A DNA stretch of 64,000 nucleotides, taken from IMG/VR virus record IMGVR_UViG_3300009104_001210, positions 62,001 through 126,000 of that record; one strand, written 5' to 3'. Below the pieces are notes generated by a model that was given only the letters and a program-made list of their open reading frames with translations, did not search any database and was not told the DNA's origin. Of this stretch, positions 3,625-34,010 are shown piece by piece. The position numbers and the translations under genes are program-made. How positions within the stretch are numbered: position 1 is the first letter of the stretch; each line of letters starts with the position of its first letter.

Positions 3625-3992
3625 TTAAATTAAAAAAATTAATAAACGAAAGAAAATTTGGTGAACCTTTACCAAAATTAGAACGTAGTGATTGGCCAAA
3701 TATGAGTAAACAAACTCAAATTTCTGAGAAAAAAGAACTTGGTGGAGCTAAGATACATATGATTGATATGGCAACTGATAGAAATAATCATAATGAAGCT
3801 CGAAGACTATTAGCTGTATATATGGGGAATAAAAAGTTAGCAAAAGTTTATACAGCCATAGAGGATTTAAATATGGCACTTGGTCATTTACCACCAGAGT
3901 TAAGTAAACTTCGTATGAAAATGGATAAAGAATTATTTAAACAATCTTACAGCAAGTATTCAGATCATAATATTATAGTTGGAGTATTTTAG
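3621..3992 (+). CDS. Hypothetical protein, putative internal head protein
   Basis: N-terminus MIKLKKLINE resembles a cleavable capsid-targeting leader; overlaps the upstream stop. Confidence 0.6.
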   Translation: MIKLKKLINERKFGEPLPKLERSDWPNMSKQTQISEKKELGGAKIHMIDMATDRNNHNEARRLLAVYMGNKKLAKVYTAIEDLNMALGHLPPELSKLRMKMDKELFKQSYSKYSDHNIIVGVF

Positions 3993-4672
3993 TGCCTTTT
4001 AAATCTGAAAAACAGAGAAAATGGATGCACGCTAATAAACCTAAAATGGCTAAGAAGTGGGAAAAGAAAAAGAAATCTGAAATAAAAGAATTCGCAGTAA
4101 GTGCTAATTTAGATAAAATATTAAAAAATCCAAAAGTAAAACAACTTTTTTCACGATTAGGGTTAAAAAGAAATTCTAAAGAAGATGTTATAAAGGTTAT
4201 GAATTATTTTGCAAGAAATCCACAAGCACTTAATGCACTTAGAGTAGCATTAGTTGGTGAAGCATGGCCACCCCAGAAAAAAGATAAAGATAATGGGGAA
4301 GAGCCAGAAAAAGAAGAACCTAAAGATAAAAAATTGAGTAAAGGAATGGATGACGAAGAAGATTACGAAAGAGATCTTGATGAAGCACCAATAGGTACAC
4401 CACCACCTTTTAGTTCACCAGAAGCAAAAAATCATGTGGATAGAGATTTAACTGTAATGTCAAAACATTTAGGAAAAGCGTCATATGAAATTATTAAAAT
4501 GATGATGCAAGGTGTTAAAAGTGGTAAATATGATGCATTAGATTTAGCAAGGGGAATCAAAACTGGTTCAACTAAAAGAACACATTATGGCGAAGAAGAT
4601 TTTATACAACAATTATGGAGTAAAGTAAGAGATAAATTTAGAAGGTATTCAAAAAGAGGAAAACTTCGATAA
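3992..4672 (+). CDS. Hypothetical protein, putative internal head protein
   Basis: GTG start; MPFKSEKQRKWMHAN N-terminus; internal IKE/VGE/LDE Glu sites. Confidence 0.6.
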   Translation: MPFKSEKQRKWMHANKPKMAKKWEKKKKSEIKEFAVSANLDKILKNPKVKQLFSRLGLKRNSKEDVIKVMNYFARNPQALNALRVALVGEAWPPQKKDKDNGEEPEKEEPKDKKLSKGMDDEEDYERDLDEAPIGTPPPFSSPEAKNHVDRDLTVMSKHLGKASYEIIKMMMQGVKSGKYDALDLARGIKTGSTKRTHYGEEDFIQQLWSKVRDKFRRYSKRGKLR

Positions 4673-4675
4673 ACT

Positions 4676-4685
4676 TATATTTATA
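4676..4685 (+). promoter_or_regulatory. Candidate phage promoter, ATATTTAT motif
   Basis: TATATTTATA in the intergenic gap, followed by SD AGGAG and ATG 4703; the motif recurs in at least 11 intergenic gaps. Confidence 0.55.
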
Positions 4686-4702
4686 CTTATAGGAGTTAAA
4701 TT

Positions 4703-5368
4703 ATGGCTAAAAATATAAAATTAAAAGATTTAATAAACGAAAGTACTTCTTTCACAGGTATAGGGGGATTTGTACCTCTTGCACCAATTAATTCTACATC
4801 AATGACAAGAATATCAGATTTGGTAGAAGCTTCATGGGTAGAAGAAGATAAAAAGAAAGTAGATAGAGGTTCTTTTATTGATGAAGTAAAAGCTTTTGGT
4901 AATATAGGTGAAAAAGTTTATAGAAAAACTTCTTTACAAAAAGTAGCAAAATCTTTATCAGAATTAGCTGAAAAAGCTCGGGTTGCTACATTACAAGAAA
5001 CAGATGATTGGTTTGATAAAGTTACTATCAATAAAAATATGAAATCATTAGGTAATGCTTCAGGGGAATTTACAAAGATAGCAAAAGAAGCAAATTCTTT
5101 ACAACAAAGAATGGAATCACTATATGAAGATATGGGACACATTCTTGGTAGGTATTATGATTTAGATGAAGCTGAAATAGCAGTTAAAGAAGCAGGTGAG
5201 GATCCAGCTGGACCACAAAGTGGTGGTGGTGAAGAATATGAGAAATTCTTTAGAGCAGCTTTGAAGAAATTCGGAGTTTCAGAACCAGATAAACTTCCTG
5301 ATGAGAAAAAAGCAGAGTTTTATAACTATGTTGACGCCAATTGGAAGGGTGATAACGAATCTGATTAA
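4703..5368 (+). CDS. Hypothetical protein, putative internal head protein
   Basis: MAKNIKLKDLINE leader; coiled-coil core; SD AGGAG. Confidence 0.65.
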   Translation: MAKNIKLKDLINESTSFTGIGGFVPLAPINSTSMTRISDLVEASWVEEDKKKVDRGSFIDEVKAFGNIGEKVYRKTSLQKVAKSLSELAEKARVATLQETDDWFDKVTINKNMKSLGNASGEFTKIAKEANSLQQRMESLYEDMGHILGRYYDLDEAEIAVKEAGEDPAGPQSGGGEEYEKFFRAALKKFGVSEPDKLPDEKKAEFYNYVDANWKGDNESD

Positions 5369-24739: not shown

Positions 24740-27151
24740 ATGGCGGAAAGAATTGTAAGTCCAGGTGTCTTTACACGTGAACGAGACCTATCATTTCTTC
24801 CTCAAGGAATTGCAGAAATAGGGGCAGCAATTATAGGTCCAACTAAAAAAGGACCCGCATTCGTTCCAACTTTAATTCGCAATTTTTCTGAGTTTGAAGA
24901 AATGTTCGGTACACTCGACAAACGGTATTATACACCATATACTGTTCAGCAATATTTAAGAAGTGCTGGTACAGTAACAGTTGTGAGAGTATTAGGAATT
25001 GGTGGATATAAACCTGATGTTGTTGTTTTATCAGCAGTACGTAAGAACGGAGCGGGAGCTTCAGGCGCTAGAGGCACATTAGCTGTTTTAGCACCATCAC
25101 GTGGTGGTTCAAACGGAACTGCAGATTTAACACCATCTACAGGAAGTGGCACTTGGGGATCATATTCGTTAGTAGTGAGTGGAAGTGGTGTAACCACTTT
25201 TTCAAAATCTATTTCGTTTAATACTGCAAGTGCAAATTATATCGGAGAAGTTCTTAGTAGAGACCCACAAGTTAATACAGACGGTAGTACCACACACCCT
25301 GTATATCTTTATAAAGAGTTTAAAGGATTCGCATCCTCTACAGGTTCAAATGGTTGGCTTGGAGTAGTTACTGCTTCAGCAACTACACTTGATTTAAATT
25401 CAGGTGTAACTACATTTGGAGCAAATGGAGATGCAGATACTTGGACAGGTAATAAAGATTATAGTGTAGCAAGAACACCGTATATTCAATCACAAAAAGT
25501 TTCAGGAGCTAGATATAATCTATTTAGATTTTATACACGCTCACATGGAACAGGTATAAGTAGCAAATATAAAGTTAATGTGTTGAATGTTAAGGCAGCA
25601 GCTTCGATACCAGGTTCAGACTATGGTGCATTTTCAGTTCAAGTTAGGACTCATAATCCAGGACAAACTGACGATAATCAAATAGTAGAACAATGGGATA
25701 ATTTAAGTACTGATCCTGATTCAGCAAACTATTTTGCTAGAGTAATTGGTGATAGGTTTGTTGAAATTGATTCAAATGGCAAGTTAACCTATAAAGGTGA
25801 TTGGCCAAATATGAGTAAACATATTCGTATTGGTGATTACGCTAATTTAGAATCAATGCCTAAAACAGTTGTTCCTATGGGATTCGCAGCTTGTAATATA
25901 CCTGTATCAGGTGCACCTAGTGCTTCTTTTGTAACTTCGCAGGTTAATAGTAATGGTGATTTCGATTCAAATATATTTTATGGATTTGATTTTAGTTCAA
26001 CGAACTATGACAATTTAGAATATTTAGCACCAATACCAAAATCTGCAGCTACTACAGGTAACGTAACTATGTCTCTTGAAGATATGTTAGGTGCTAACGA
26101 TGCAAGCACATTGGCTAGTACTTATTCAGATGCTACAGAGAAAGTTACATTATCATTATCAGCAATTGGACAGAGAAAATTTTCAGTACCTTTCCAATGG
26201 GGATTTGATGGAGATAATCCTGGAAATCCAAAATTAACAGGTAATGATATTACTGCAGCAAATACTATGGGATTTGACTGTTCAAGTGCAACAACAAGTG
26301 GTTCAATAGCATATAAAAGAGCTATTAACGCAATAAGTAATCCTGATGAATTTGATATCAACTTATTGGTAACACCTGGTATTATTCATAGATTACATCC
26401 AAAAGTAACAAATCATTCAATCTTGAAAATAGAAGCAAGAGCGGATGCTTTTTATGTTATGGATGCAGCATCATGTGGAGATACTATAGCAGTAGTAACA
26501 AATACTGTAAGTGCACTTGATACAAATTACGCAGGAACATATTATCCCTGGGTTAAGATAGTTGACTCTAACACAAATAGACCTGTTTGGGTCCCACCTT
26601 CAGTTGTATTACCTGGAGTAATCGCATTTACTGATAAAGTGGCACATGAATGGTTCGCACCAGCTGGTCTAAATCGTGGTGGTTTAACTACAGTATTAGA
26701 AGCTAAAACAAGATTAACACACGCTGAAAGAGATGATCTTTATGAAGAAAGAGTTAATCCAATAGCTTCATTTCCTGGTCAGGGAGTTGTGGTATTCGGA
26801 CAGAAAACACTACAATCCAAACCATCAGCATTAGATAGAATCAATGTTCGTAGATTGTTGATTGCATTGAAGAAATTCATCGCATCATCTTCAAGATACT
26901 TAGTATTCGAACAGAATACAGTAGCAACAAGAAACAGATTCTTGAATATTGTTAATCCATATCTCGAAAGTGTACAGGCTAATAGTGGTCTAAGTGCATT
27001 TAAAGTAGTAATGGATGAATCAAATAACACACCTGATGTTGTGGATAGAAACAAATTGGTAGGACAGATATTTATTCAACCTACGAGAACTGCAGAGTTT
27101 ATCGTACTTGATTTCGTTGTTCAACCTACAGGGGCAGCATTCCCTGAATAA
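24740..27151 (+). CDS. gp18: Tail sheath protein (gp18-like)
   Basis: SPGVFTRERDLS, IIGPTKKGPAFVPT, WFAPAGLNRG, GQKTLQ, RINVRRLL, FIQPTRTAEFIVLDF motifs. Confidence 0.95.
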   Translation: MAERIVSPGVFTRERDLSFLPQGIAEIGAAIIGPTKKGPAFVPTLIRNFSEFEEMFGTLDKRYYTPYTVQQYLRSAGTVTVVRVLGIGGYKPDVVVLSAVRKNGAGASGARGTLAVLAPSRGGSNGTADLTPSTGSGTWGSYSLVVSGSGVTTFSKSISFNTASANYIGEVLSRDPQVNTDGSTTHPVYLYKEFKGFASSTGSNGWLGVVTASATTLDLNSGVTTFGANGDADTWTGNKDYSVARTPYIQSQKVSGARYNLFRFYTRSHGTGISSKYKVNVLNVKAAASIPGSDYGAFSVQVRTHNPGQTDDNQIVEQWDNLSTDPDSANYFARVIGDRFVEIDSNGKLTYKGDWPNMSKHIRIGDYANLESMPKTVVPMGFAACNIPVSGAPSASFVTSQVNSNGDFDSNIFYGFDFSSTNYDNLEYLAPIPKSAATTGNVTMSLEDMLGANDASTLASTYSDATEKVTLSLSAIGQRKFSVPFQWGFDGDNPGNPKLTGNDITAANTMGFDCSSATTSGSIAYKRAINAISNPDEFDINLLVTPGIIHRLHPKVTNHSILKIEARADAFYVMDAASCGDTIAVVTNTVSALDTNYAGTYYPWVKIVDSNTNRPVWVPPSVVLPGVIAFTDKVAHEWFAPAGLNRGGLTTVLEAKTRLTHAERDDLYEERVNPIASFPGQGVVVFGQKTLQSKPSALDRINVRRLLIALKKFIASSSRYLVFEQNTVATRNRFLNIVNPYLESVQANSGLSAFKVVMDESNNTPDVVDRNKLVGQIFIQPTRTAEFIVLDFVVQPTGAAFPE

Positions 27152-27183
27152 GTTTGACTTATAAACAACGCTGACGTATAATG

Positions 27184-27216
27184 AAAAACCCTGATTTCGG
27201 TTGGGGTTTTTCTTTT
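27184..27216 (+). terminator. Probable (possibly leaky) terminator after the sheath gene
   Basis: AAAAACCCTGAT-TTCG-GTTGGGGTTTTT stem with several G-U pairs, then a U-tract. Confidence 0.6.
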
Positions 27217-27333
27217 TATATAAAAACTTCAATAAAACTAATAAGAAGTCTTATTTTCTAATATTGTTATTTTTTTAATTTTTTGATATTTATAATAGAA
27301 GAAGATATAATAATTGCTTTTAGGAGAAAAATA

Positions 27334-27822
27334 ATGCCTGATATCCTCGACACTAATGAGATATTTTTTACGCCGTTTGAACCGAAAACGAAAAATCGGT
27401 ATATCATGTACATTGAAGGTATACCATCCTATTTAGTTAAGACGGCAGGAAGACCTCAAATACAATTTGAAGAATTGGTTTTAGATCATATTAATGTCAA
27501 AAGACATTTAAAAGGTAAAGGTACTTGGCAACCTGTAGACATTATGTTATATGATCCAATAGTTCCAAGTGGTGCGCAAGCAGTAATGGAATGGGTTAGG
27601 TTGTCTCATGAATCTGTAACAGGCCGTGATGGTTATGCAGATTTTTATAAGAAAGATGTAACTTTTAATATGTTAGGTCCAGTAGGAGATATTGTTGAGG
27701 AGTGGACTTTAAAGGGCGCTTTTATATCAACCGCAAATTTTGGTGAAGTTGGATTCGCAGAAAATGATCCAGCAGAAATTACATTAACTTTGCAGTATGA
27801 TTACGCAGTCTTACAATTCTAA
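27334..27822 (+). CDS. gp19: Tail tube protein (gp19-like)
   Basis: FEPKTKNRY...LYDPIVPSGAQAVMEWVR...LGPVGDIVEEWTLKGAF; start set at ATG 27334 (SD AGGAG) rather than the ORF-track start 27283. Confidence 0.88.
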   Translation: MPDILDTNEIFFTPFEPKTKNRYIMYIEGIPSYLVKTAGRPQIQFEELVLDHINVKRHLKGKGTWQPVDIMLYDPIVPSGAQAVMEWVRLSHESVTGRDGYADFYKKDVTFNMLGPVGDIVEEWTLKGAFISTANFGEVGFAENDPAEITLTLQYDYAVLQF

Positions 27823-28043: not shown

Positions 28044-28802
28044 ATGAGTGAAGTTACATTTCCTACGGAAGAGGTTAATCTTCCATCTAAGGGTTTGTAC
28101 TATGACAAATCCAACCCATTATCAAGTGGTAAAGTAGAAATAAAATATATGACAGCTAAAGAGGAAGATATTCTTACCTCAATAAACCTTATTCGTAAGG
28201 GAACTGTTATAGATAAAGTTCTTGAAGCTTTGATAGTTGATAAAAAAATCAAAATAGATGATTTATTGGTTGGGGATAAAAATGGTTTAGTCATAGCTAC
28301 TAGAATTCTTGCTTACGGTAAAAATTACGAAATTCAGGCATTTTGTGATGATTGTCAAGAAGTAAGTCAATTAGTAGTTGATTGTACAAAACTTTCCGAT
28401 AAGGAAATATCAACTAAAACAAAAGAAAATAAGTTCTCTATGGAACTTCCAAGAACAAAAGTTAGAATAGAATTCAAACTTTTAACTAGTGGTGAAGAGA
28501 AGTTGGTTGAAAAAGATGTAGTGGCTATGCAAAAAGCACAACCTGACCATGATTATACTAACACTTTCAGATTCAAACGAATGATTACTTCAGTAGATGG
28601 AGACACTAAACAAACGGTTATTAACGATTTTGTTGATAATAGATTTTTAGCACAAGATTCGTTGGCATTTAGAAAGCATTTACAAGACGTAACTCCTGAT
28701 GTAAATATGGGTTATCCTTTTGAATGTGTTAAATGTGATCATGAACAGGAGGTAACGGTGCCATTGGGCACCACGTTTCTTTGGCCTGACACATCTCAAT
28801 AG
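28044..28802 (+). CDS. Baseplate hub / tail assembly chaperone (T4 gp26-like)
   Basis: LPSKGLYY, MTAKEEDIL, LLVGDKNG, CxxC pairs, ends FLWPD; lies between tube and tape measure. Confidence 0.75.
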   Translation: MSEVTFPTEEVNLPSKGLYYDKSNPLSSGKVEIKYMTAKEEDILTSINLIRKGTVIDKVLEALIVDKKIKIDDLLVGDKNGLVIATRILAYGKNYEIQAFCDDCQEVSQLVVDCTKLSDKEISTKTKENKFSMELPRTKVRIEFKLLTSGEEKLVEKDVVAMQKAQPDHDYTNTFRFKRMITSVDGDTKQTVINDFVDNRFLAQDSLAFRKHLQDVTPDVNMGYPFECVKCDHEQEVTVPLGTTFLWPDTSQ

Positions 28803-28995
28803 ACTTCAAGTACACGAAGAAATATTTAATCTTTTAAATTACGGTAATGGTGGTTACACTTTTAACGAAGTGTATAATATGCCTATATATCTAAGAAGGT
28901 TTTATCTAAAAAGACTCAATAAGGAATATAAAGATATTGCAGCTGAAAGAGATAAAGCTAATAGAAAGTCTCAACAAGTCTTGAAAAAGAAATAA
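28783..28995 (+). CDS. +1-frame ORF, probable C-terminal extension of the chaperone via frameshift
   Basis: GLTHLNRLQVHEEIFNLLNYGNGGYTFNEVYNMPIYLRRFYLKRLNKEY...KKK; frame open from 28756; first GTG/ATG only at 28870/28879; overlaps TTT CTT TGG in the upstream gene. Confidence 0.65.
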   Translation, partial: GLTHLNRLQVHEEIFNLLNYGNGGYTFNEVYNMPIYLRRFYLKRLNKEYKDIAAERDKANRKSQQVLKKK

Positions 28996-29061
28996 AATCT
29001 TATATTTCGATATTTATTATTGACACAATCCTGTAACTAAAATTCAATTCGGAGTTAAACA

Positions 29062-29292
29062 ATGTCAAAGAAGATAAATGAAGGTATTGTTGATAAGGTT
29101 TTTGGTAAAGTCATAAATCTTGTTATGAAAGGGCAATCTAGAAAAGCTATGAATGCCTTCAAAAAAGATAAAAAACTACAGAGAGATATAAAAGCCGCTG
29201 CTGATGCGCAAGATACTCTGAAGAAAAGTATTGAAAAATTAAGAAAAGACCCCGAATTCGAAAAGGAATATCAAAAGAGTTTAAAATTATAA
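29062..29292 (+). CDS. Hypothetical protein
   Basis: 76 aa; SD CGGAG; MSKKINE leader. Confidence 0.65.
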   Translation: MSKKINEGIVDKVFGKVINLVMKGQSRKAMNAFKKDKKLQRDIKAAADAQDTLKKSIEKLRKDPEFEKEYQKSLKL

Positions 29293-29304
29293 AAAGGGTA
29301 ATGC

Positions 29305-30951
29305 ATGCCAACTAAACGGGAACAACAGCAGTTAAATGATGCGTTAAACCAAACTAAAGAACTAATATCATCTATCAATAAATCAGTAGGTGAGATGGAT
29401 GGTGGATTTTCGGATATTGGTGGATCAATAAAAAAGAACGCTAGTGCTTTGAATGCGTTTTTGAAAGTTTCTGCTAAAAATAATGAAGTAACAAAAGCAA
29501 CAGTAAAAACTGGTAATCTTATAGCGGAAGCATATGATGATGTTGCTGAAAATCTTGAAGATGTTCTTAAAGGTAATAAACAATTTAAAGTAAGTTCAAA
29601 ACAAATTGGTGATTTAATAAATGGTAGTATAAAGGGTGGAGCTTCAAAAAATGCTGAACATATGAGAGAACAAGCAGAAAATGTTCAGAAAATGTTGAAG
29701 GTGTTTGAAAATCCAAAATTCCAAACAGCTTTTTCAGGAATAGAAAAGGGTGCAGATAGGTTAACAGGTTTTATTAATAAACTCCCAGGTGGTCAAACGA
29801 TGTCAAAAGCCTTTGGAGTAGATAAACAAATAGCTGCTAATACTAAGCAAATGCAAGGAAATATGTTGAAATTTGCTAAAAGTGGAAAAGTATCGGCTAA
29901 GGGTATAGGTGGTTTACTTAAAGGTACTAAGTTTCTTAAAATTGGAGTTCTTGGTGCAGCATTAGCGATGATATCTTTTGGATTAGAAGCTAATAAAACA
30001 CAAAAAGCATTAGGTGGAACTTATACACAGGCAGCAAAGGTACTTGCTACGTCTAAAGCAATAGCTGCAGCAAATAAACTTAACGGTATGACTCAAGAAG
30101 AATCAATGGATTTGATGATGGGTATTAATCGTGAGTTTGGTAATATGGATAAAGCTGCTTTAGGTGTAACTATGAAAGCAAGTAATTTAACTGCCAATTT
30201 TGGTTTGAGTGCAGGAAATGTTGGTAAGTTAGCTAGACAGATGCAGGCAGTTGGTTCTACAAGTTTAGAAGCATCTATAAATACTATAGAAATGGGTGGA
30301 GAGTTAGCAAGAGCAGCAAATGTTCCTGTAGCTGACGTGATGAATGATGTTGCACAGAATACAGAATTTTTCGCTAGATTTGCTAAAGATGGTGGAGTTA
30401 ATATAATAGCAGCAGGAATAGCAGCTAAGAAATTAGGTTTGGAAATGGCTAATCTTGCTTCTATAGCAGATAGTTTATTAGACTTCGAAAGCTCAATAAC
30501 TAAACAAATGGAAGCTGAGGTTTTATTAGGTAAAGAATTAAATCTTGAAAAAGCAAGAGAGATGGTATTCAATAATGACATAGCAGGAGCTATGGCAGAA
30601 GTATCAAAGTTAGTTTCTCCTGAAGAATTTCAAAAGATGGATGCAGTTAGAAGAAGTACATTAGCAGGTGCCGTAGGTTTAGATGCAGCAACTTTTGCAA
30701 AAGCTATTAGTGGTGATACGACAGGAGTAGGAGATGCAGTTATTGCACCAGGAGGAAAAGTTATTTCAACATCACCACAAGATTATTTAATAGCAACTAC
30801 AAATCCAGGAACATTAGGTGGTGGAATGGATACTTCAAAACTTGAAGGTTTGATGGCACAAGTAGCAGCGTCTGTAGATGGACTTAGAAATGATACAGTA
30901 GACGGAACTTATCAAACTAAAATAGCAATAGAAAGACAAGGAATAGCATAA
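29305..30951 (+). CDS. Tape measure protein
   Basis: Ala/Gly/Lys-rich helical; SLLDFESSITKQMEAEVLLGKELNLEKAR motif; downstream of tube and chaperone. Confidence 0.75.
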   Translation: MPTKREQQQLNDALNQTKELISSINKSVGEMDGGFSDIGGSIKKNASALNAFLKVSAKNNEVTKATVKTGNLIAEAYDDVAENLEDVLKGNKQFKVSSKQIGDLINGSIKGGASKNAEHMREQAENVQKMLKVFENPKFQTAFSGIEKGADRLTGFINKLPGGQTMSKAFGVDKQIAANTKQMQGNMLKFAKSGKVSAKGIGGLLKGTKFLKIGVLGAALAMISFGLEANKTQKALGGTYTQAAKVLATSKAIAAANKLNGMTQEESMDLMMGINREFGNMDKAALGVTMKASNLTANFGLSAGNVGKLARQMQAVGSTSLEASINTIEMGGELARAANVPVADVMNDVAQNTEFFARFAKDGGVNIIAAGIAAKKLGLEMANLASIADSLLDFESSITKQMEAEVLLGKELNLEKAREMVFNNDIAGAMAEVSKLVSPEEFQKMDAVRRSTLAGAVGLDAATFAKAISGDTTGVGDAVIAPGGKVISTSPQDYLIATTNPGTLGGGMDTSKLEGLMAQVAASVDGLRNDTVDGTYQTKIAIERQGIA

Positions 30952-33900
30952 TGGCATTAGTAGATATGAAATCAAATTTAGCTATTGGTGTTGGTTCAAA
31001 AGAATCACCTCAATCTTTTGCTGATGGTCATTCAGCGTATACTGTTACGGGACAAAGAAAATTTGAAACTGCAATAAGACATGATGTTGAAAAAGATGTA
31101 TTTACTTCTTATAATCGTAAAGGTGATGAATTAAAATGGATGTTTAATGATGCTTTTTCAGGACAAGGTAGTATGTTAGTTCAAGCAAAAGAGTTTGACT
31201 TACGTGCATATTATGATAGAGCACTTAAAAATACAGATGTTTTAGGTGCAAGAAATAATAATAGATTAGGTTTTGACGAACCATTTATTCTTAAACCAAT
31301 TGGTGATAGATGGGGACCTGATACTTGGTCTGTAGATGAAGGAATGGTTAGAGCAGGTATACTTACACAATCAGCAAGAACTGTAGCCGATGTTCAAAGA
31401 ATAGGTAAGTTTTTATTGACACCAAGAGGTGTTGGTTTTATAGCGAAACAAGAGGTTTTACAAATGCTGAATGCAGGTGGTTCAGTTTCAATGTCTACAT
31501 TAAAAAGTAGAATAAATCAAGCATTAGGAAAAGATGTTTTAAGACAAGATTCAGTACCACAAAGATTTTCAGCAGGTAGAGATATATTTAAGAGTTCTTT
31601 TGCTAAAGTTGATGCAAAAACTGGTCATTATATGGGTGGTGGTCCAACCGTACAAAATTGGGAAGGTAGTGATATTAGAACTTGGAGAGGGCCAGAATCT
31701 ATTATAGCATCACTTCCTATAGGAGCACATTTTGTAAGGCATAAAACACCAGTAGGATCTCCTACTATTAAATTAATTAACAATGTTGGTAACTTTATTG
31801 TTGATGCAGGTGGTGGAGTATTATCTTTATTGGATGGTATTCAAGTTGCTTGGCCTCATATTAGTATGAATCCAGATTTTAGAGCAGGTAGTTTACTAAC
31901 AGGATTAGGTAATATAGCAGCAAATGTTGGTAGAGGTATGGGTGATATCTTTCCTAATATTTTTGAGAATGCTAAAACAGGGGTAGGAAATATTGCTGAT
32001 GCATTAGGTAACGCATTTTCAAATGTAACTTTACCAAAAGTAAGTTTGGGTAGGGTTTCTGATTCACTATCAGGATTATTTCCAGGATTAATAGGTGTAC
32101 AAGGAATAGGAACTCCTGATTTTAGTGGAATGATGAGTTTGTTGGGTGGATTATCAAATAAATTAGGTAATTTAGTAAGTAGTCTACCTATACCAAGTAT
32201 AAGTTTACCGCCATTACCAAGTTTACCATCTTTACCAAAAATAGATTTACCAGATTTAGGGAATCCATTTTCAGGTATATCAAGTTTTGTAAGTGGGATT
32301 AAATTACCAGGAATAAAATTTTCAGGAAGAGGTGGATTAGGATTAGGTAGTTTAAAAGGAGTATTACCTGCTATTAATTTTGGATTAAAAATTAAAGGTG
32401 GTAATTTAGGATTTGATTTATCTGCTTTTGATGATTTTAAATTTGGTTTTAATAAAGGATTAAAAGGATTAATTGATTTACCTGGATTTGATCTTAATAT
32501 GGTAACAGCAAGAGGAATTCCACAACCAGGCGTACCTCTTTATGCAAGAAAAGGAGCATCAGGTCGTTATGGTGAAGATATAGCAAGTTTGAAAGAAGGT
32601 GTAGGTGGATCTCAACATTTAAATAGAGACGAAATAGAAGCTTATGGAGTACCAAAGTTATGGTATACAACTGCAAAAGATATTGGAGACAATAGAGGTT
32701 CATTAGCAAATCTTTATGATGCGGATTTTCCATATACAAAATTGATATTAGGTAAAACAACTAAATCCGTATTATGGACTTTTGGCATTGGCTTTTCAGA
32801 CAAGATAAAGACAGACAATAAAATAACTGGAATACCATATGCAATAGGTGCTGGGTTTGCTGGTGGTAGGTTGGATCCAATAAATACCCCCAACTTTCCA
32901 TTAAATCAGACAAAAGTATATAGGGATATTATTACACCCGAATTTCCTACAAATGTTCAAGATTCAAGTGGAACTAAAAATAAGATACAAAAATATGAAA
33001 TGTTATCTTATGGACAATTAGGTGGTGAAGCAGAGGGTTATGGTAAGAAGAATGAAAAAAATTCCGCTGATATTACAAGAGGAATAGGTTCTTATGGTAA
33101 AGCTGCTAGATTTATTCCAGCACCGGCAAAGGATGGAAAACCTCTTACTGATGTAGTGGCATCTGATGGTACAGGTGTATATAAAACAACGTTACAAGAT
33201 ACAATAAATTTACATCCATATGGTGGTTCAATTGCTTCTCAACACGTTAATAATGAAAATAGCGACTTTGTTCCATTTAAGTTTAGAGATATGGTAAATG
33301 GTAAGTGGATTATATTTAGAGCAATTATTGAGAGTGTTTCAGATACTTCATCCCCACAATTTGCAGAAGAAAGATACATTGGTAGACCAGATAAAGTTTA
33401 TACATATCAAGGTTCTGATAGAAATGTTAATATTACTTTTAAAGTTATGCCAAAATCTGCACAAGAATTAGTTACTCTTTGGGAAAAGTTAAATTATTTG
33501 AGAGGATTAACTTATCCTACAGTAAAAAATAATCGTATGATAGCACCATTTTTTAGTTTGACATTAGGTGATATGTTTGATAGTCAACCAATGATATTTC
33601 AGAGTTTAAATTTTAGTATTGATCAATCATCTTTATGGGAAATTAGACCAGGTTTAAGATTACCAAAATTAATACAATGTTCTGCAGATATGAGAATAAT
33701 TGAGAAAACTTTACCAACTTCTATAGGTAAACATTATGATTTAGATTGGTTACATGATGGACAGAATACAATTGGTGGAGATCCAATGACTGATCCTACT
33801 TTAGTAGAACCCGATAGAAAAAAATATATAGATTTATGGAAAGAGTTGGGAATGAATGGAATGAGTGGTGAAGTTATGGATAATTTAATGGCAGCAGCAG

Positions 33901-34010
33901 AAACGGTAGAGGCTTTACAAGAAGCGATAGATGCTGCTAAAAGTGTAGATGCTGGTATTGGCGCAGGAGCTTTGGATGCACCAAATATAAATTTTAGTAT
34001 CAGTAAGTAG
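30951..34010 (+). CDS. Baseplate protein with C-terminal tube-like domain
   Basis: C-terminal FRAIIESVSD...YIGRPDKVYTYQGSDRNVNITFKV resembles baseplate tube-initiator domains; central low-complexity L/P/G region. Confidence 0.6.
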   Translation: MALVDMKSNLAIGVGSKESPQSFADGHSAYTVTGQRKFETAIRHDVEKDVFTSYNRKGDELKWMFNDAFSGQGSMLVQAKEFDLRAYYDRALKNTDVLGARNNNRLGFDEPFILKPIGDRWGPDTWSVDEGMVRAGILTQSARTVADVQRIGKFLLTPRGVGFIAKQEVLQMLNAGGSVSMSTLKSRINQALGKDVLRQDSVPQRFSAGRDIFKSSFAKVDAKTGHYMGGGPTVQNWEGSDIRTWRGPESIIASLPIGAHFVRHKTPVGSPTIKLINNVGNFIVDAGGGVLSLLDGIQVAWPHISMNPDFRAGSLLTGLGNIAANVGRGMGDIFPNIFENAKTGVGNIADALGNAFSNVTLPKVSLGRVSDSLSGLFPGLIGVQGIGTPDFSGMMSLLGGLSNKLGNLVSSLPIPSISLPPLPSLPSLPKIDLPDLGNPFSGISSFVSGIKLPGIKFSGRGGLGLGSLKGVLPAINFGLKIKGGNLGFDLSAFDDFKFGFNKGLKGLIDLPGFDLNMVTARGIPQPGVPLYARKGASGRYGEDIASLKEGVGGSQHLNRDEIEAYGVPKLWYTTAKDIGDNRGSLANLYDADFPYTKLILGKTTKSVLWTFGIGFSDKIKTDNKITGIPYAIGAGFAGGRLDPINTPNFPLNQTKVYRDIITPEFPTNVQDSSGTKNKIQKYEMLSYGQLGGEAEGYGKKNEKNSADITRGIGSYGKAARFIPAPAKDGKPLTDVVASDGTGVYKTTLQDTINLHPYGGSIASQHVNNENSDFVPFKFRDMVNGKWIIFRAIIESVSDTSSPQFAEERYIGRPDKVYTYQGSDRNVNITFKVMPKSAQELVTLWEKLNYLRGLTYPTVKNNRMIAPFFSLTLGDMFDSQPMIFQSLNFSIDQSSLWEIRPGLRLPKLIQCSADMRIIEKTLPTSIGKHYDLDWLHDGQNTIGGDPMTDPTLVEPDRKKYIDLWKELGMNGMSGEVMDNLMAAAETVEALQEAIDAAKSVDAGIGAGALDAPNINFSISK

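What the first reader, a model, noticed from the sequence alone, without database searches (positions are those of the whole stretch)
28770..28995. Probable +1 programmed frameshift in the gp26-like tail chaperone
Seen: the gene ends ACG TTT CTT TGG CCT GAC ACA TCT CAA TAG. The +1 frame reads TTC TTT GGC CTG (FFGL...) and stays open to 28995, with protein-like sequence for 29 codons before any GTG/ATG start and no SD. Both TTT-C (Phe to Phe) and CTT-T (Leu, as in the prfB CUU-U site) allow +1 re-pairing just before a Trp codon. Products would be 252 aa and about 316 aa. Known: G/GT-type chaperone pairs between the tube and tape-measure genes are made by programmed frameshifting, usually -1. 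Inference: a +1 (or -2) variant in a T4-like myovirus, where this has not, to my knowledge, been emphasised.
Basis: partly seen in the sequence, partly recalled or inferred. Interest (0 to 1): 0.75.

Follow-up and report, generated by a model that had tools for sequence, protein, structure and literature searches.

The report
+1 frameshift in phage tail chaperone
A marine phage makes a short and a long form of its tail-assembly chaperone from one gene, most likely by ribosomes slipping one base forward at TTT-CTT-T; the short/long principle is already known for this protein family, but the forward slip site seems not to be.

Summary
Gene 28044-28802 (252 aa, Pfam T4_baseplate, the gp26/gp51 family) follows the sheath and tube genes. 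It ends ...ACG TTT CTT TGG CCT...TAG, and the +1 frame is open from 28756 to 28995.

In all 80 related loci where it can be read, a +1 ORF overlaps the stop. TTT-YTT-TGG-CCT is fixed even at synonymous sites. Third-position wobble switches from frame 0 to frame +1 at the motif. Some loci have no start codon anywhere in the +1 ORF. Flanking stop codons confine the shift to five codons.

Some relatives instead carry two tandem genes, a short one ending SFFWP* and a long one reading SFFGITPQYK... in one frame. This matches the predicted junction TFFGLTHLNR. Contigs from three metagenome runs show no indel.

The 71-aa extension folds as a three-helix module. It is homologous to the C-terminal tail of T4 gp51, so T4 gp26/gp51 are the same short/long pair as two genes. 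Cyanophage and KVP40-like relatives reach it by a -1 shift at T_TTT_TTY.

Vladimirov, Gautam and Davidson (2022) already identified these as the T4-like tail assembly chaperones. This is therefore a +1 variant of a known kind. The interrupted T-run here argues for ribosomal rather than transcriptional slippage. No product has been observed.

The parts
28044..28802 (+). Short chaperone form (TAC-N, 'G'): gp26-like ORF of 252 aa, ending ...GTTFLWPDTSQ*
   Evidence: PF12322 T4_baseplate, E 2.4e-11, 44.2 bits against a cut-off of 24.5; phrog_150 baseplate hub. AlphaFold2 model pLDDT 90, pTM 0.85. Residues 1-93 give the two best VIA-align matches, YqbN 3klu (Z 5.3) and the HK97 tail assembly chaperone 2ob9 (Z 5.0).
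28776..28787 (+). Recoding motif TTT CTT TGG CCT. The +1 slip is on TTT_C (28776-28779) or CTT_T (28779-28782).
   Evidence: The motif is TTTTTTTGGCCT in 61 of 82 loci, TTTCTTTGGCCT in 15, and one of four rarer variants in 6. All 12 positions carry 1.26-2.0 bits, against 0.08-0.5 bits at upstream third positions. Across loci the +1 frame opens as late as -2 and frame 0 stops as early as +15 relative to the first T, so the shift must fall within TTT YTT TGG CCT NNN.
28780..28995 (+). +1-frame extension ('T' module, 71 aa plus TAA) that is added to residues 1-245 to give the 316-aa long form. The +1 frame is open from 28756.
   Evidence: Conserved from FFGL onward in 51 non-redundant loci. Wobble periodicity is in frame +1. 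The model is three helices, pLDDT 86. hhalign against the T modules of T4-like phages, including the T4 gp51 tail, gives 94.5% probability, E 8e-8.
28757..28772 (+). GC-rich hairpin GGTGCC-ATTG-GGCACC, ending 3 nt before the motif; role unknown
   Evidence: Terminator-like hit. The closest relatives keep a hairpin here with one swapped pair at synonymous sites. It is not family-wide.
24740..27151 (+). Tail sheath gene (context)
   Evidence: PF04984 and PF17482; phrog_23, E 7.5e-75
27334..27822 (+). Tail tube gene (context), 162 aa from the ATG at 27334, which has an AGGAG upstream
   Evidence: phrog_4542 tail tube, E 5e-26; start read
29062..29292 (+). Conserved 76-aa ORF between the chaperone and the large downstream proteins
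   Evidence: Homologue at the same place in Mel-JY01, E 1e-5; ORFs of 78-79 aa at the same place in close relatives
29305..34010 (+). Two large ORFs (548 and 1019 aa), the presumed tape-measure region
   Evidence: phrog_58 tape measure, E 0.0014, for the 1019-aa ORF. The 548-aa ORF matches the large protein that follows the chaperone in Mel-JY01, E 3e-16. The gene at this position is annotated as tape measure in immuto, LIS04, HSE3 and HTVC008M.

Best explanation
Gene 28044-28802 encodes the short form of a tail assembly chaperone of the gp26/gp51 (PF12322) family. While decoding UUU CUU UGG at 28776-28784, a fraction of ribosomes slip one base forward. Either tRNA-Phe moves from UUU to UUC, or tRNA-Leu moves from CUU to UUU. 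Translation then continues in the +1 frame to 28995.

This gives a 316-aa long form, ...GTTF(F/L)GLTHLNR.... It carries a 71-aa three-helix C-terminal module homologous to the tail of T4 gp51. By analogy with lambda gpG/gpGT, the shared N-terminal part would coat the tape-measure protein and the rare long form would recruit tail-tube subunits. Neither form would remain in the virion.

Shown here: the ORF architecture, its conservation, coding in the +1 frame directly from the motif, the absence of independent starts, natural in-frame long forms, and homology to gp51.

Inferred: that the shift is ribosomal, how efficient it is, and which partners the two parts bind.
For: - The +1 ORF overlaps the stop in 80 of 80 readable related loci and in phages immuto, Mel-JY01 and LR756508.
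- TTT is used at the first motif codon in 82 of 82 loci, against 77.5% TTT among Phe codons elsewhere in these genes. CCT is used in 80 of 82, against 40% elsewhere.
- Codon periodicity of conservation switches to frame +1 at the motif.
- Flanking stop codons confine the shift to five codons.
- L006 and L079 have no start codon in the +1 ORF.
- The profile of the extension finds 1,413 cluster representatives. Among them are 293-313-aa proteins with a gp26 domain and the extension in one frame.
- In L090 and L091 such a long gene sits next to a short paralogue ending SFFWP...*. Its junction SFFGITPQYK / SIFGLSAENK matches the predicted TFFGLTHLNR.
- T4 gp51 is PF12322 (E 3.9e-52) plus a 48-aa tail. 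That tail is homologous to the extension.
- The window, immuto and 13 other loci have TTTCTTT, a run of only three T. This is a poor substrate for polymerase slippage but a good one for tRNA re-pairing.
- Contigs of public runs show no indel.
- The gene lies between the tube gene and the presumed tape-measure genes.
Against: - Nobody has seen the long protein, or an edited or unedited mRNA. The one RNA run that holds this DNA does not cover the site.
- No stimulatory element was found. There is no SD at prfB-like spacing, no stop or obviously rare codon in the A site (it is UGG or CUU), and no conserved downstream structure.
- 74% of relatives have a clean T7 run, where polymerase slippage cannot be excluded. 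[quoted passage not shown]
- A hairpin plus U-tract geometry just upstream fits a polymerase pause better than a ribosomal stimulator.
- The fold match of the N-terminal part to known chaperones is only Z about 5.
- Complex prediction of the extension with the tube protein gave no answer.
- The tape-measure assignment is weak (E 0.0014).
Confidence: 0.8

Rival explanations
1. Transcriptional slippage. RNA polymerase skips one U (or adds two) in the T-rich tract, so a minority of mRNAs encode the long form in a single frame and ribosomes read them normally.
For: 61 of 82 relatives have an uninterrupted T7 run. The -1 relatives have T6-T8 runs. A GC-rich hairpin ends 3 nt before the tract in the window and its closest relatives, which is the geometry of a polymerase pause site. 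The title of Vladimirov et al. [quoted passage not shown]
Against: The window itself, phage immuto and 13 other loci have TTTCTTT. L003 has TTTCTA and L073 has TTTTTA. Slippage on three T would break the RNA-DNA hybrid at the C. The run length is fixed at exactly 7 and never longer, whereas from my own knowledge the known slippage sites are 9 or more. The variable position 4 (C/T) is exactly the one that is synonymous in frame +1 and conservative in frame 0, as expected from dual coding plus tRNA re-pairing.
Confidence: 0.1
2. A -2 ribosomal shift instead of +1. It reaches the same frame with a nearly identical product carrying one extra residue.
For: On the T7 variants, tRNA-Phe could re-pair two bases back. 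-2 shifts on U-rich heptamers are documented (PMC3458567, listed).
Against: In TTTCTTT, TTTCTA and TTTTTA no tRNA in the shift window can re-pair at -2. The natural in-frame long forms have F-F-G or I-F-G at the junction with no extra residue.
Confidence: 0.04
3. Two separate genes. The downstream ORF is translated on its own from GTG 28870 or ATG 28879 (38-41 aa), or by re-initiation after the TAG.
For: Gene callers and GenBank records annotate such small ORFs, as 'gp51 baseplate hub assembly catalyst' or 'hypothetical protein'.
Against: The conserved sequence starts 31 codons upstream of the first start codon and overlaps the end of the upstream gene. Starts are absent or not conserved in relatives. 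The ATG is a Met/Leu position inside a conserved motif. The annotated ORFs shrink to 30-57 aa depending on where an ATG happens to lie. In-frame fusions exist.
Confidence: 0.03
4. A sequencing or assembly indel, or a decaying gene: the true gene is one 316-aa ORF.
For: None beyond the bare fact of two overlapping frames.
Against: Contigs of three runs from three studies agree, with no gaps. Thousands of homologues stop at the same place. The frame-0 tail WP... after the motif is itself conserved.
Confidence: 0.01

Closest known systems
Phage lambda gpG / gpGT tail assembly chaperones (Levin 1993; Xu, Hendrix and Duda 2004, 2013, 2014, as summarised in PMC5009743)
   Same: There are two products from one gene lying before the tape-measure gene. 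[quoted passage not shown] The second ORF has no start of its own.
   Different: Lambda uses a -1 shift at G_GGA_AAG. Here the shift is +1 at UUU_YUU_U. There is no detectable sequence similarity. The protein here is larger (252 aa) and carries a CxxC...CxxC pair. The binding partners are untested here.
T4 gp26 (208 aa) and gp51 (249 aa), the tail assembly chaperones of T4-like phages (Vladimirov, Gautam and Davidson 2022, known through)
   Same: Same Pfam family, PF12322. gp26 ends just after the same FF motif...KEFFELL*. gp51 is the gp26-like domain plus a tail homologous to the extension here.
   Different: T4 encodes the short and long forms as two divergently transcribed genes with no recoding. 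The window makes both from one gene. The same two-gene solution, in tandem, occurs in metagenomic relatives L090 and L091.
gp26 plus the small 'gp51' ORF of cyanophages (P-SSM2, S-WAM1), pelagiphage HTVC008M, KVP40-like Vibrio phages, Cronobacter phage LPCS28, Agrobacterium phage OLIVR5 and Xanthomonas phage Xoo-sp13
   Same: The shift is at the same C-terminal FF motif and adds a homologous extension.
   Different: The extension lies in the -1 frame, behind a classical heptamer T_TTT_TTY. GenBank lists it as a separate gene of 30-57 aa.
Bacterial prfB (CUU_UGA_C) and yeast Ty1 (CUU_AGG_C) +1 frameshift sites (from my own knowledge)
   Same: P-site tRNA re-pairing one base forward on CUU_U or UUU_Y. 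In Ty1, as here, the first +1-frame codon is GGC.
   Different: There is no stop or known hungry codon in the A site, no SD three bases upstream, and no autoregulatory logic.
Firmicute myophages with a PF12322 gene between tube and tape measure (Listeria LIS04, Bacillus HSE3 and SP-15, Streptococcus GXN1)
   Same: The extension is in the +1 frame at the FF motif: GAG TTC TTT CGT CCC or GAG TTT TTT AGT ACC.
   Different: The motif after the FF differs (no TGG CCT), and identity is only 24-27%.

Membership tests
Pfam PF12322 T4_baseplate (gp26/gp51 family) | Score above the curated gathering threshold over most of the profile | tested here: met
   44.2 bits against a cut-off of 24.5; profile positions 9-211 of 219. 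T4 gp26 and gp51 both hit the same model.
G/GT-type tail assembly chaperone pair | Gene lies between the tail tube gene and the tape-measure gene | tested here: met
   The sheath and tube genes lie upstream. The downstream ORFs match the tape-measure region only weakly (phrog_58 E 0.0014; E 3e-16 to the Mel-JY01 protein). The gene after the chaperone is annotated as tape measure in immuto, LIS04, HSE3 and HTVC008M.
G/GT-type tail assembly chaperone pair | A second ORF overlaps the 3' end, lacks its own start, and keeps a conserved frame offset | tested here: met
   the +1 ORF is present in all 80 loci where it can be read, and starts are absent or not conserved.
G/GT-type tail assembly chaperone pair | A slippery sequence lies in the overlap | tested here: met
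   UUU_Y / YUU_U allows +1 re-pairing and is invariant. It is not the classical -1 heptamer.
G/GT-type tail assembly chaperone pair | Both products are made, with the long form in the minority | not testable with these tools
   No proteomic data were available, and the RNA run does not cover the site.
G/GT-type tail assembly chaperone pair | The short part binds the tape measure; the extension binds the tube protein | tested here: inconclusive
   Complex prediction of the tube protein with the extension returned 'no answer', score 0.00. The tape measure was not tested.
G/GT-type tail assembly chaperone pair | Chaperone (TAC) fold | tested here: inconclusive
   The best two of 649 compared chains are YqbN 3klu (Z 5.3) and the HK97 tail assembly chaperone 2ob9 (Z 5.0), on residues 1-93. 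The Foldseek E-value is 0.49. Z values in this range are common by chance.
prfB-type +1 frameshift site | CUU_U slip with a stop codon in the A site and an SD about 3 nt upstream | tested here: not met
   The A site is a sense codon (UGG or CUU). The only AGGAGG ends about 24 nt upstream and is not conserved.
Transcriptional slippage site | A long uninterrupted homopolymer run | tested here: not met
   The window has T3-C-T3. Relatives have at most T7.

The most novel reading that the evidence does not exclude
UUU_YUU_UGG is a previously undescribed, self-sufficient ribosomal +1 frameshift signal: a sense codon in the A site, no SD and no downstream structure. It is used by a very abundant clade of marine myoviruses and, in related form, by Firmicute myophages. 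One chaperone family has solved the same short/long problem in three interchangeable ways: a +1 shift, a -1 shift, or gene duplication as in T4 gp26/gp51.
Probability: 0.35. Interest if true: 0.6.

Novelty: new variant of a known kind. Interest (0 to 1): 0.45.

Why it matters
The 2016 recoding review (PMC5009743) still listed T4 as the exception to the conserved G/GT tail-chaperone frameshift. The 2022 work and the data here remove that exception: gp26 and gp51 are the short and long chaperone forms.

The window adds a large natural data set for a +1 solution: more than 7,800 homologues (only the 8,000 candidates sharing most words were scored) and 1,413 clusters of the extension. Because part of that set has an interrupted T-run, it can discriminate between ribosomal and transcriptional slippage, which seems to be the open question for this family.

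Practically, hundreds of GenBank phage records list the extension as a stand-alone 30-80-aa 'gp51' or hypothetical protein, or leave a gap. These should be re-annotated as a joined CDS.

Tried and rejected
- Pfam and PHROGs on the extension alone: no family.
- hhalign of the extension profile against full-length T4 gp51 as a single sequence: no hit, probability 0.1%. Homology appeared only in pairwise comparison with the cyanophage extension and in profile-profile comparison.
- RNAalifold and z-scores for a conserved stimulatory structure: none. Downstream mean z is -1.1 and the consensus structure is empty. The first attempt timed out.
- Complex prediction of the tube protein with the extension: no answer.
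- Sequence search of PDB with the family profile: nothing.
It was repeated without them.
- The RNA run X20 holds only 28411-28588, so there is no transcript evidence at the site.
- Seven literature searches with gp26, gp51 and frameshift terms found nothing. The prior paper surfaced only in the reference list of a 2025 Pseudomonas phage paper, and it is not held in the library.
- No tRNA gene in the window could bear on decoding.
- The AGGAGG at 28747-28752 was considered as an SD-like stimulator. It was rejected because it is about 24 nt away and arises from conserved Glu codons.

Full report
**Observation.** ORF 28044-28802 encodes 252 aa and ends ACG TTT CTT TGG CCT GAC ACA TCT CAA TAG. The +1 frame has a TAA at 28753-28755 and is then open to the TAA at 28993-28995. 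From the motif it reads FFGLTHLNRLQVHEEIFNLLNYGNGGYTFNEVYNMPIYLRRFYLKRLNKEY.... The first GTG and ATG in that frame are at 28870 and 28879, which is 31 and 34 codons after the slip codon. The conceptual long product is 316 aa.

**What the gene is.** The 252-aa protein belongs to Pfam PF12322 T4_baseplate (E 2.4e-11) and phrog_150 'baseplate hub'. It follows the tail sheath gene (24740-27151), the tail tube gene (27334-27822) and a 50-aa ORF. It precedes a 76-aa ORF and two large ORFs that match tape-measure regions weakly. Other window genes are a T4-type major head protein, a head-tail adaptor, a sheath stabiliser and a wedge-initiator-like giant protein, so this is a myovirus only distantly related to T4. 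The nearest named relatives are Flavobacterium phage immuto and Microcystis phage Mel-JY01. The DNA is present nearly word for word in marine metagenome runs from about ten studies.

**Not an artefact.** Logan contigs of three runs from three studies cover the site with one or two substitutions and no gaps. Two of them span all of 28300-29300 and the third spans 28631-29300. One of the three may be the source sample. More than 7,800 homologues were found among the 8,000 candidates scored, and the best 120 are all 184-259 aa, so the stop is conserved.

**Comparative test of recoding.** I fetched 80 IMG/VR loci encoding relatives of 43-70% identity and three annotated or unannotated phage records.
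- In every locus where the region can be read, a +1 ORF overlaps the stop by at least 20 nt and runs on for 59-97 codons. The other frame is not consistently open.
- The last conserved frame-0 residues are F-(F/L)-W-P. The DNA is TTTTTTTGGCCT in 61 loci, TTTCTTTGGCCT in 15, and one of four rarer variants in the remaining 6.
- Synonymous positions are frozen. TTT is used in 82 of 82 loci, against 77.5% elsewhere in these genes. CCT is used in 80 of 82, against 40% elsewhere.
- Information content at upstream third positions is 0.08-0.5 bits. It is 1.26-2.0 bits at all twelve motif positions. After the motif the low-information position moves to the third base of the +1 frame.
- Across loci the +1 frame opens as late as two bases before the first T, and frame 0 stops as early as 15 bases after it. 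A homologous shift must therefore fall within TTT YTT TGG CCT NNN.
- The +1 translation is conserved from its first residues: FFGL.PEY+..IHEQIF.L....GGF.F.E.YN(M/L)PIYLR.FY.K.L.
- L006 and L079 have no ATG, GTG or TTG anywhere in the +1 ORF, and many loci have none for 30-60 codons.
- Independent initiation, re-initiation and chance are therefore excluded.

**Natural fusions.** A profile of the extension searched against 1.84 billion representatives found 1,413 proteins. Most are 55-134-aa gene calls that begin at fortuitous starts in the overlap. Five are 293-313 aa and carry a gp26-like domain and the extension in a single frame. In two contigs this long gene lies next to a short PF12322 paralogue that ends ...SFFWPDAGV* or ...SFFWPSLGEIN*. 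The long one reads ...SFFGITPQYKPAIHKEIF... or ...SIFGLSAENKQIIHEEIF.... That is the junction predicted for the window (...TTFFGLTHLNRLQVHEEIF...). It also shows that these phages need both a short and a long form.

**Link to T4.**
- T4 gp26 (208 aa) ends ...KEFFELL*, encoded GAG TTC TTT GAG TTA CTA TAA. Gene 25 follows at once, so there is no extension.
- T4 gp51 is itself PF12322 over residues 1-201 (E 3.9e-52), followed by a 48-aa tail.
- That tail aligns from its first residue with the extension found behind gp26 in cyanophage S-WAM1 (E 2e-7) and Cronobacter phage LPCS28 (E 7e-5).
- A profile of such modules matches the marine +1 extension profile at 94.5% probability, E 8e-8.
- In P-SSM2, S-WAM1, HTVC008M, a KVP40-like Vibrio phage, LPCS28, OLIVR5 and Xoo-sp13, the module lies in the -1 frame behind T_TTT_TTY at the same FF motif.
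- tblastn finds it in 547 phage records, where it is annotated as a separate 'gp51 baseplate hub assembly catalyst' of 30-57 aa or not annotated at all.
- Firmicute myophages (LIS04, HSE3, SP-15, GXN1) have a PF12322 gene between the tube and tape-measure genes with a +1 extension at GAG TTY TTT.
- The family thus uses a +1 shift, a -1 shift or two genes for the same end.

**Structure.** The short form models confidently, with pLDDT 90. It has no relative in PDB by sequence. Among 649 chains re-aligned, the two best are YqbN 3klu (Z 5.3) and the HK97 tail assembly chaperone 2ob9 (Z 5.0), both on residues 1-93. From my own knowledge, YqbN belongs to an XkdN-like chaperone family. This is suggestive but within the range of chance. 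BFVD matches are gp26/gp51-like proteins of very diverse myoviruses. The extension models as three helices (6-22, 29-33, 37-71) with pLDDT 86. Co-folding it with the tube protein gave no answer either way.

**Mechanism.** The only re-pairing options in the five-codon window are UUU_Y to UUY (tRNA-Phe) and YUU_U to UUU. The two exceptional loci, TTT CTA TTC and TTT TTA TGG, keep only the first option, so I slightly favour a slip on the first UUU. The products would be ...TFFGL or ...TFLGL. No conserved SD or downstream structure was found.

Transcriptional slippage is the main rival. It is conceivable on the T7 variants, but not on the T3-C-T3 of the window, immuto and 13 other loci. The run is also never longer than seven.

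One observation remains unexplained. A GC-rich hairpin ends 3 nt before the tract in the window. The closest relatives keep it with a swapped pair at two synonymous sites. It is not family-wide, and its position fits a polymerase pause better than a ribosomal stimulator.

**Prior knowledge.** The 2016 recoding review states that G-T frameshifting is conserved in long-tailed phages 'except T4'. [quoted passage not shown] I could not read it. Citing papers report from it that some T4-like phages carry a short gene plus a long fused gene, and that poly-T sequences are -1 slip signals in their TAC-N genes. The principle is therefore known. The +1 direction, the UUU_YUU_UGG motif, its spread in a very abundant marine clade, and the interrupted run that argues for a ribosomal event were not mentioned in anything I could read.

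**Verdict.** This is a +1 variant of a known kind of tail-chaperone recoding. I put confidence in recoding to a fused long form at about 0.9, and in the full explanation, including a ribosomal +1 shift, at about 0.8.

Noticed in passing
window 28757-28772: A GC-rich hairpin (GGTGCC ATTG GGCACC) lies inside the coding region and ends 3 nt before the TTTCTTT tract, giving terminator-like geometry. The closest relatives keep it with a G:C to C:G swap at two synonymous sites. It is not conserved family-wide.
   Followed up: partly
L089 (T4) 3803-4429 (-) and 4480-5229 (+): T4 gp26 and gp51 are paralogues in one Pfam family. gp51 is a gp26-like domain plus a 48-aa tail homologous to the frameshift extension of relatives, so T4 has the short and long chaperone forms as two genes.
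   Followed up: yes
L095 (P-SSM2) 191-1086; L096 (HTVC008M) 206-1095; L097 (Vibrio phage D479) 29-1092; L092, L093, L094: Cyanophage, pelagiphage, KVP40-like and other T4-like records annotate the -1 extension behind T_TTT_TTY as a separate 'gp51 baseplate hub assembly catalyst' of 30-57 aa. Homology starts at the heptamer, inside gp26. These gene models look truncated.
   Followed up: partly
L090 1595-3709; L091 603-2356: These metagenomic relatives carry tandem short and long PF12322 genes instead of a frameshift. In L090 a 116-aa cysteine-rich ORF (faint DUF7487 hit) sits between them and may be a mobile insertion.
   Followed up: partly
window 28344-28355 and 28725-28736 (protein residues 101-104 and 228-231): The chaperone has a CxxC...CxxC pair (CDDC, CVKC), as do T4 gp26 and gp51, suggesting a zinc ribbon. 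Several close marine relatives (e.g. P0048, P0058, P0112) lack the first pair.
   Followed up: no
window 29062-29292: A 76-aa lysine-rich ORF lies between the chaperone and the large downstream proteins. It is conserved at the same place in Mel-JY01 (E 1e-5) and, as 78-79-aa ORFs, in close relatives. Its function is unknown.
   Followed up: partly
window 27183-27212: A strong terminator-like hairpin (13 pairs plus a T-run) lies after the sheath gene, followed by promoter-like hexamers at 27283-27311 just before the tube gene.
   Followed up: no
window 29305-34010: The tape-measure position holds two ORFs (548 and 1019 aa) whose stop and start overlap at 30951. Mel-JY01 and immuto each have one large gene there. 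This may be a split or two-part tape measure.
   Followed up: no
window 28044-28802 and relatives: Tryptophan is almost absent from these chaperones: 9 TGG codons in 82 genes outside the motif. The one invariant Trp codon sits immediately after the slip site.
   Followed up: no
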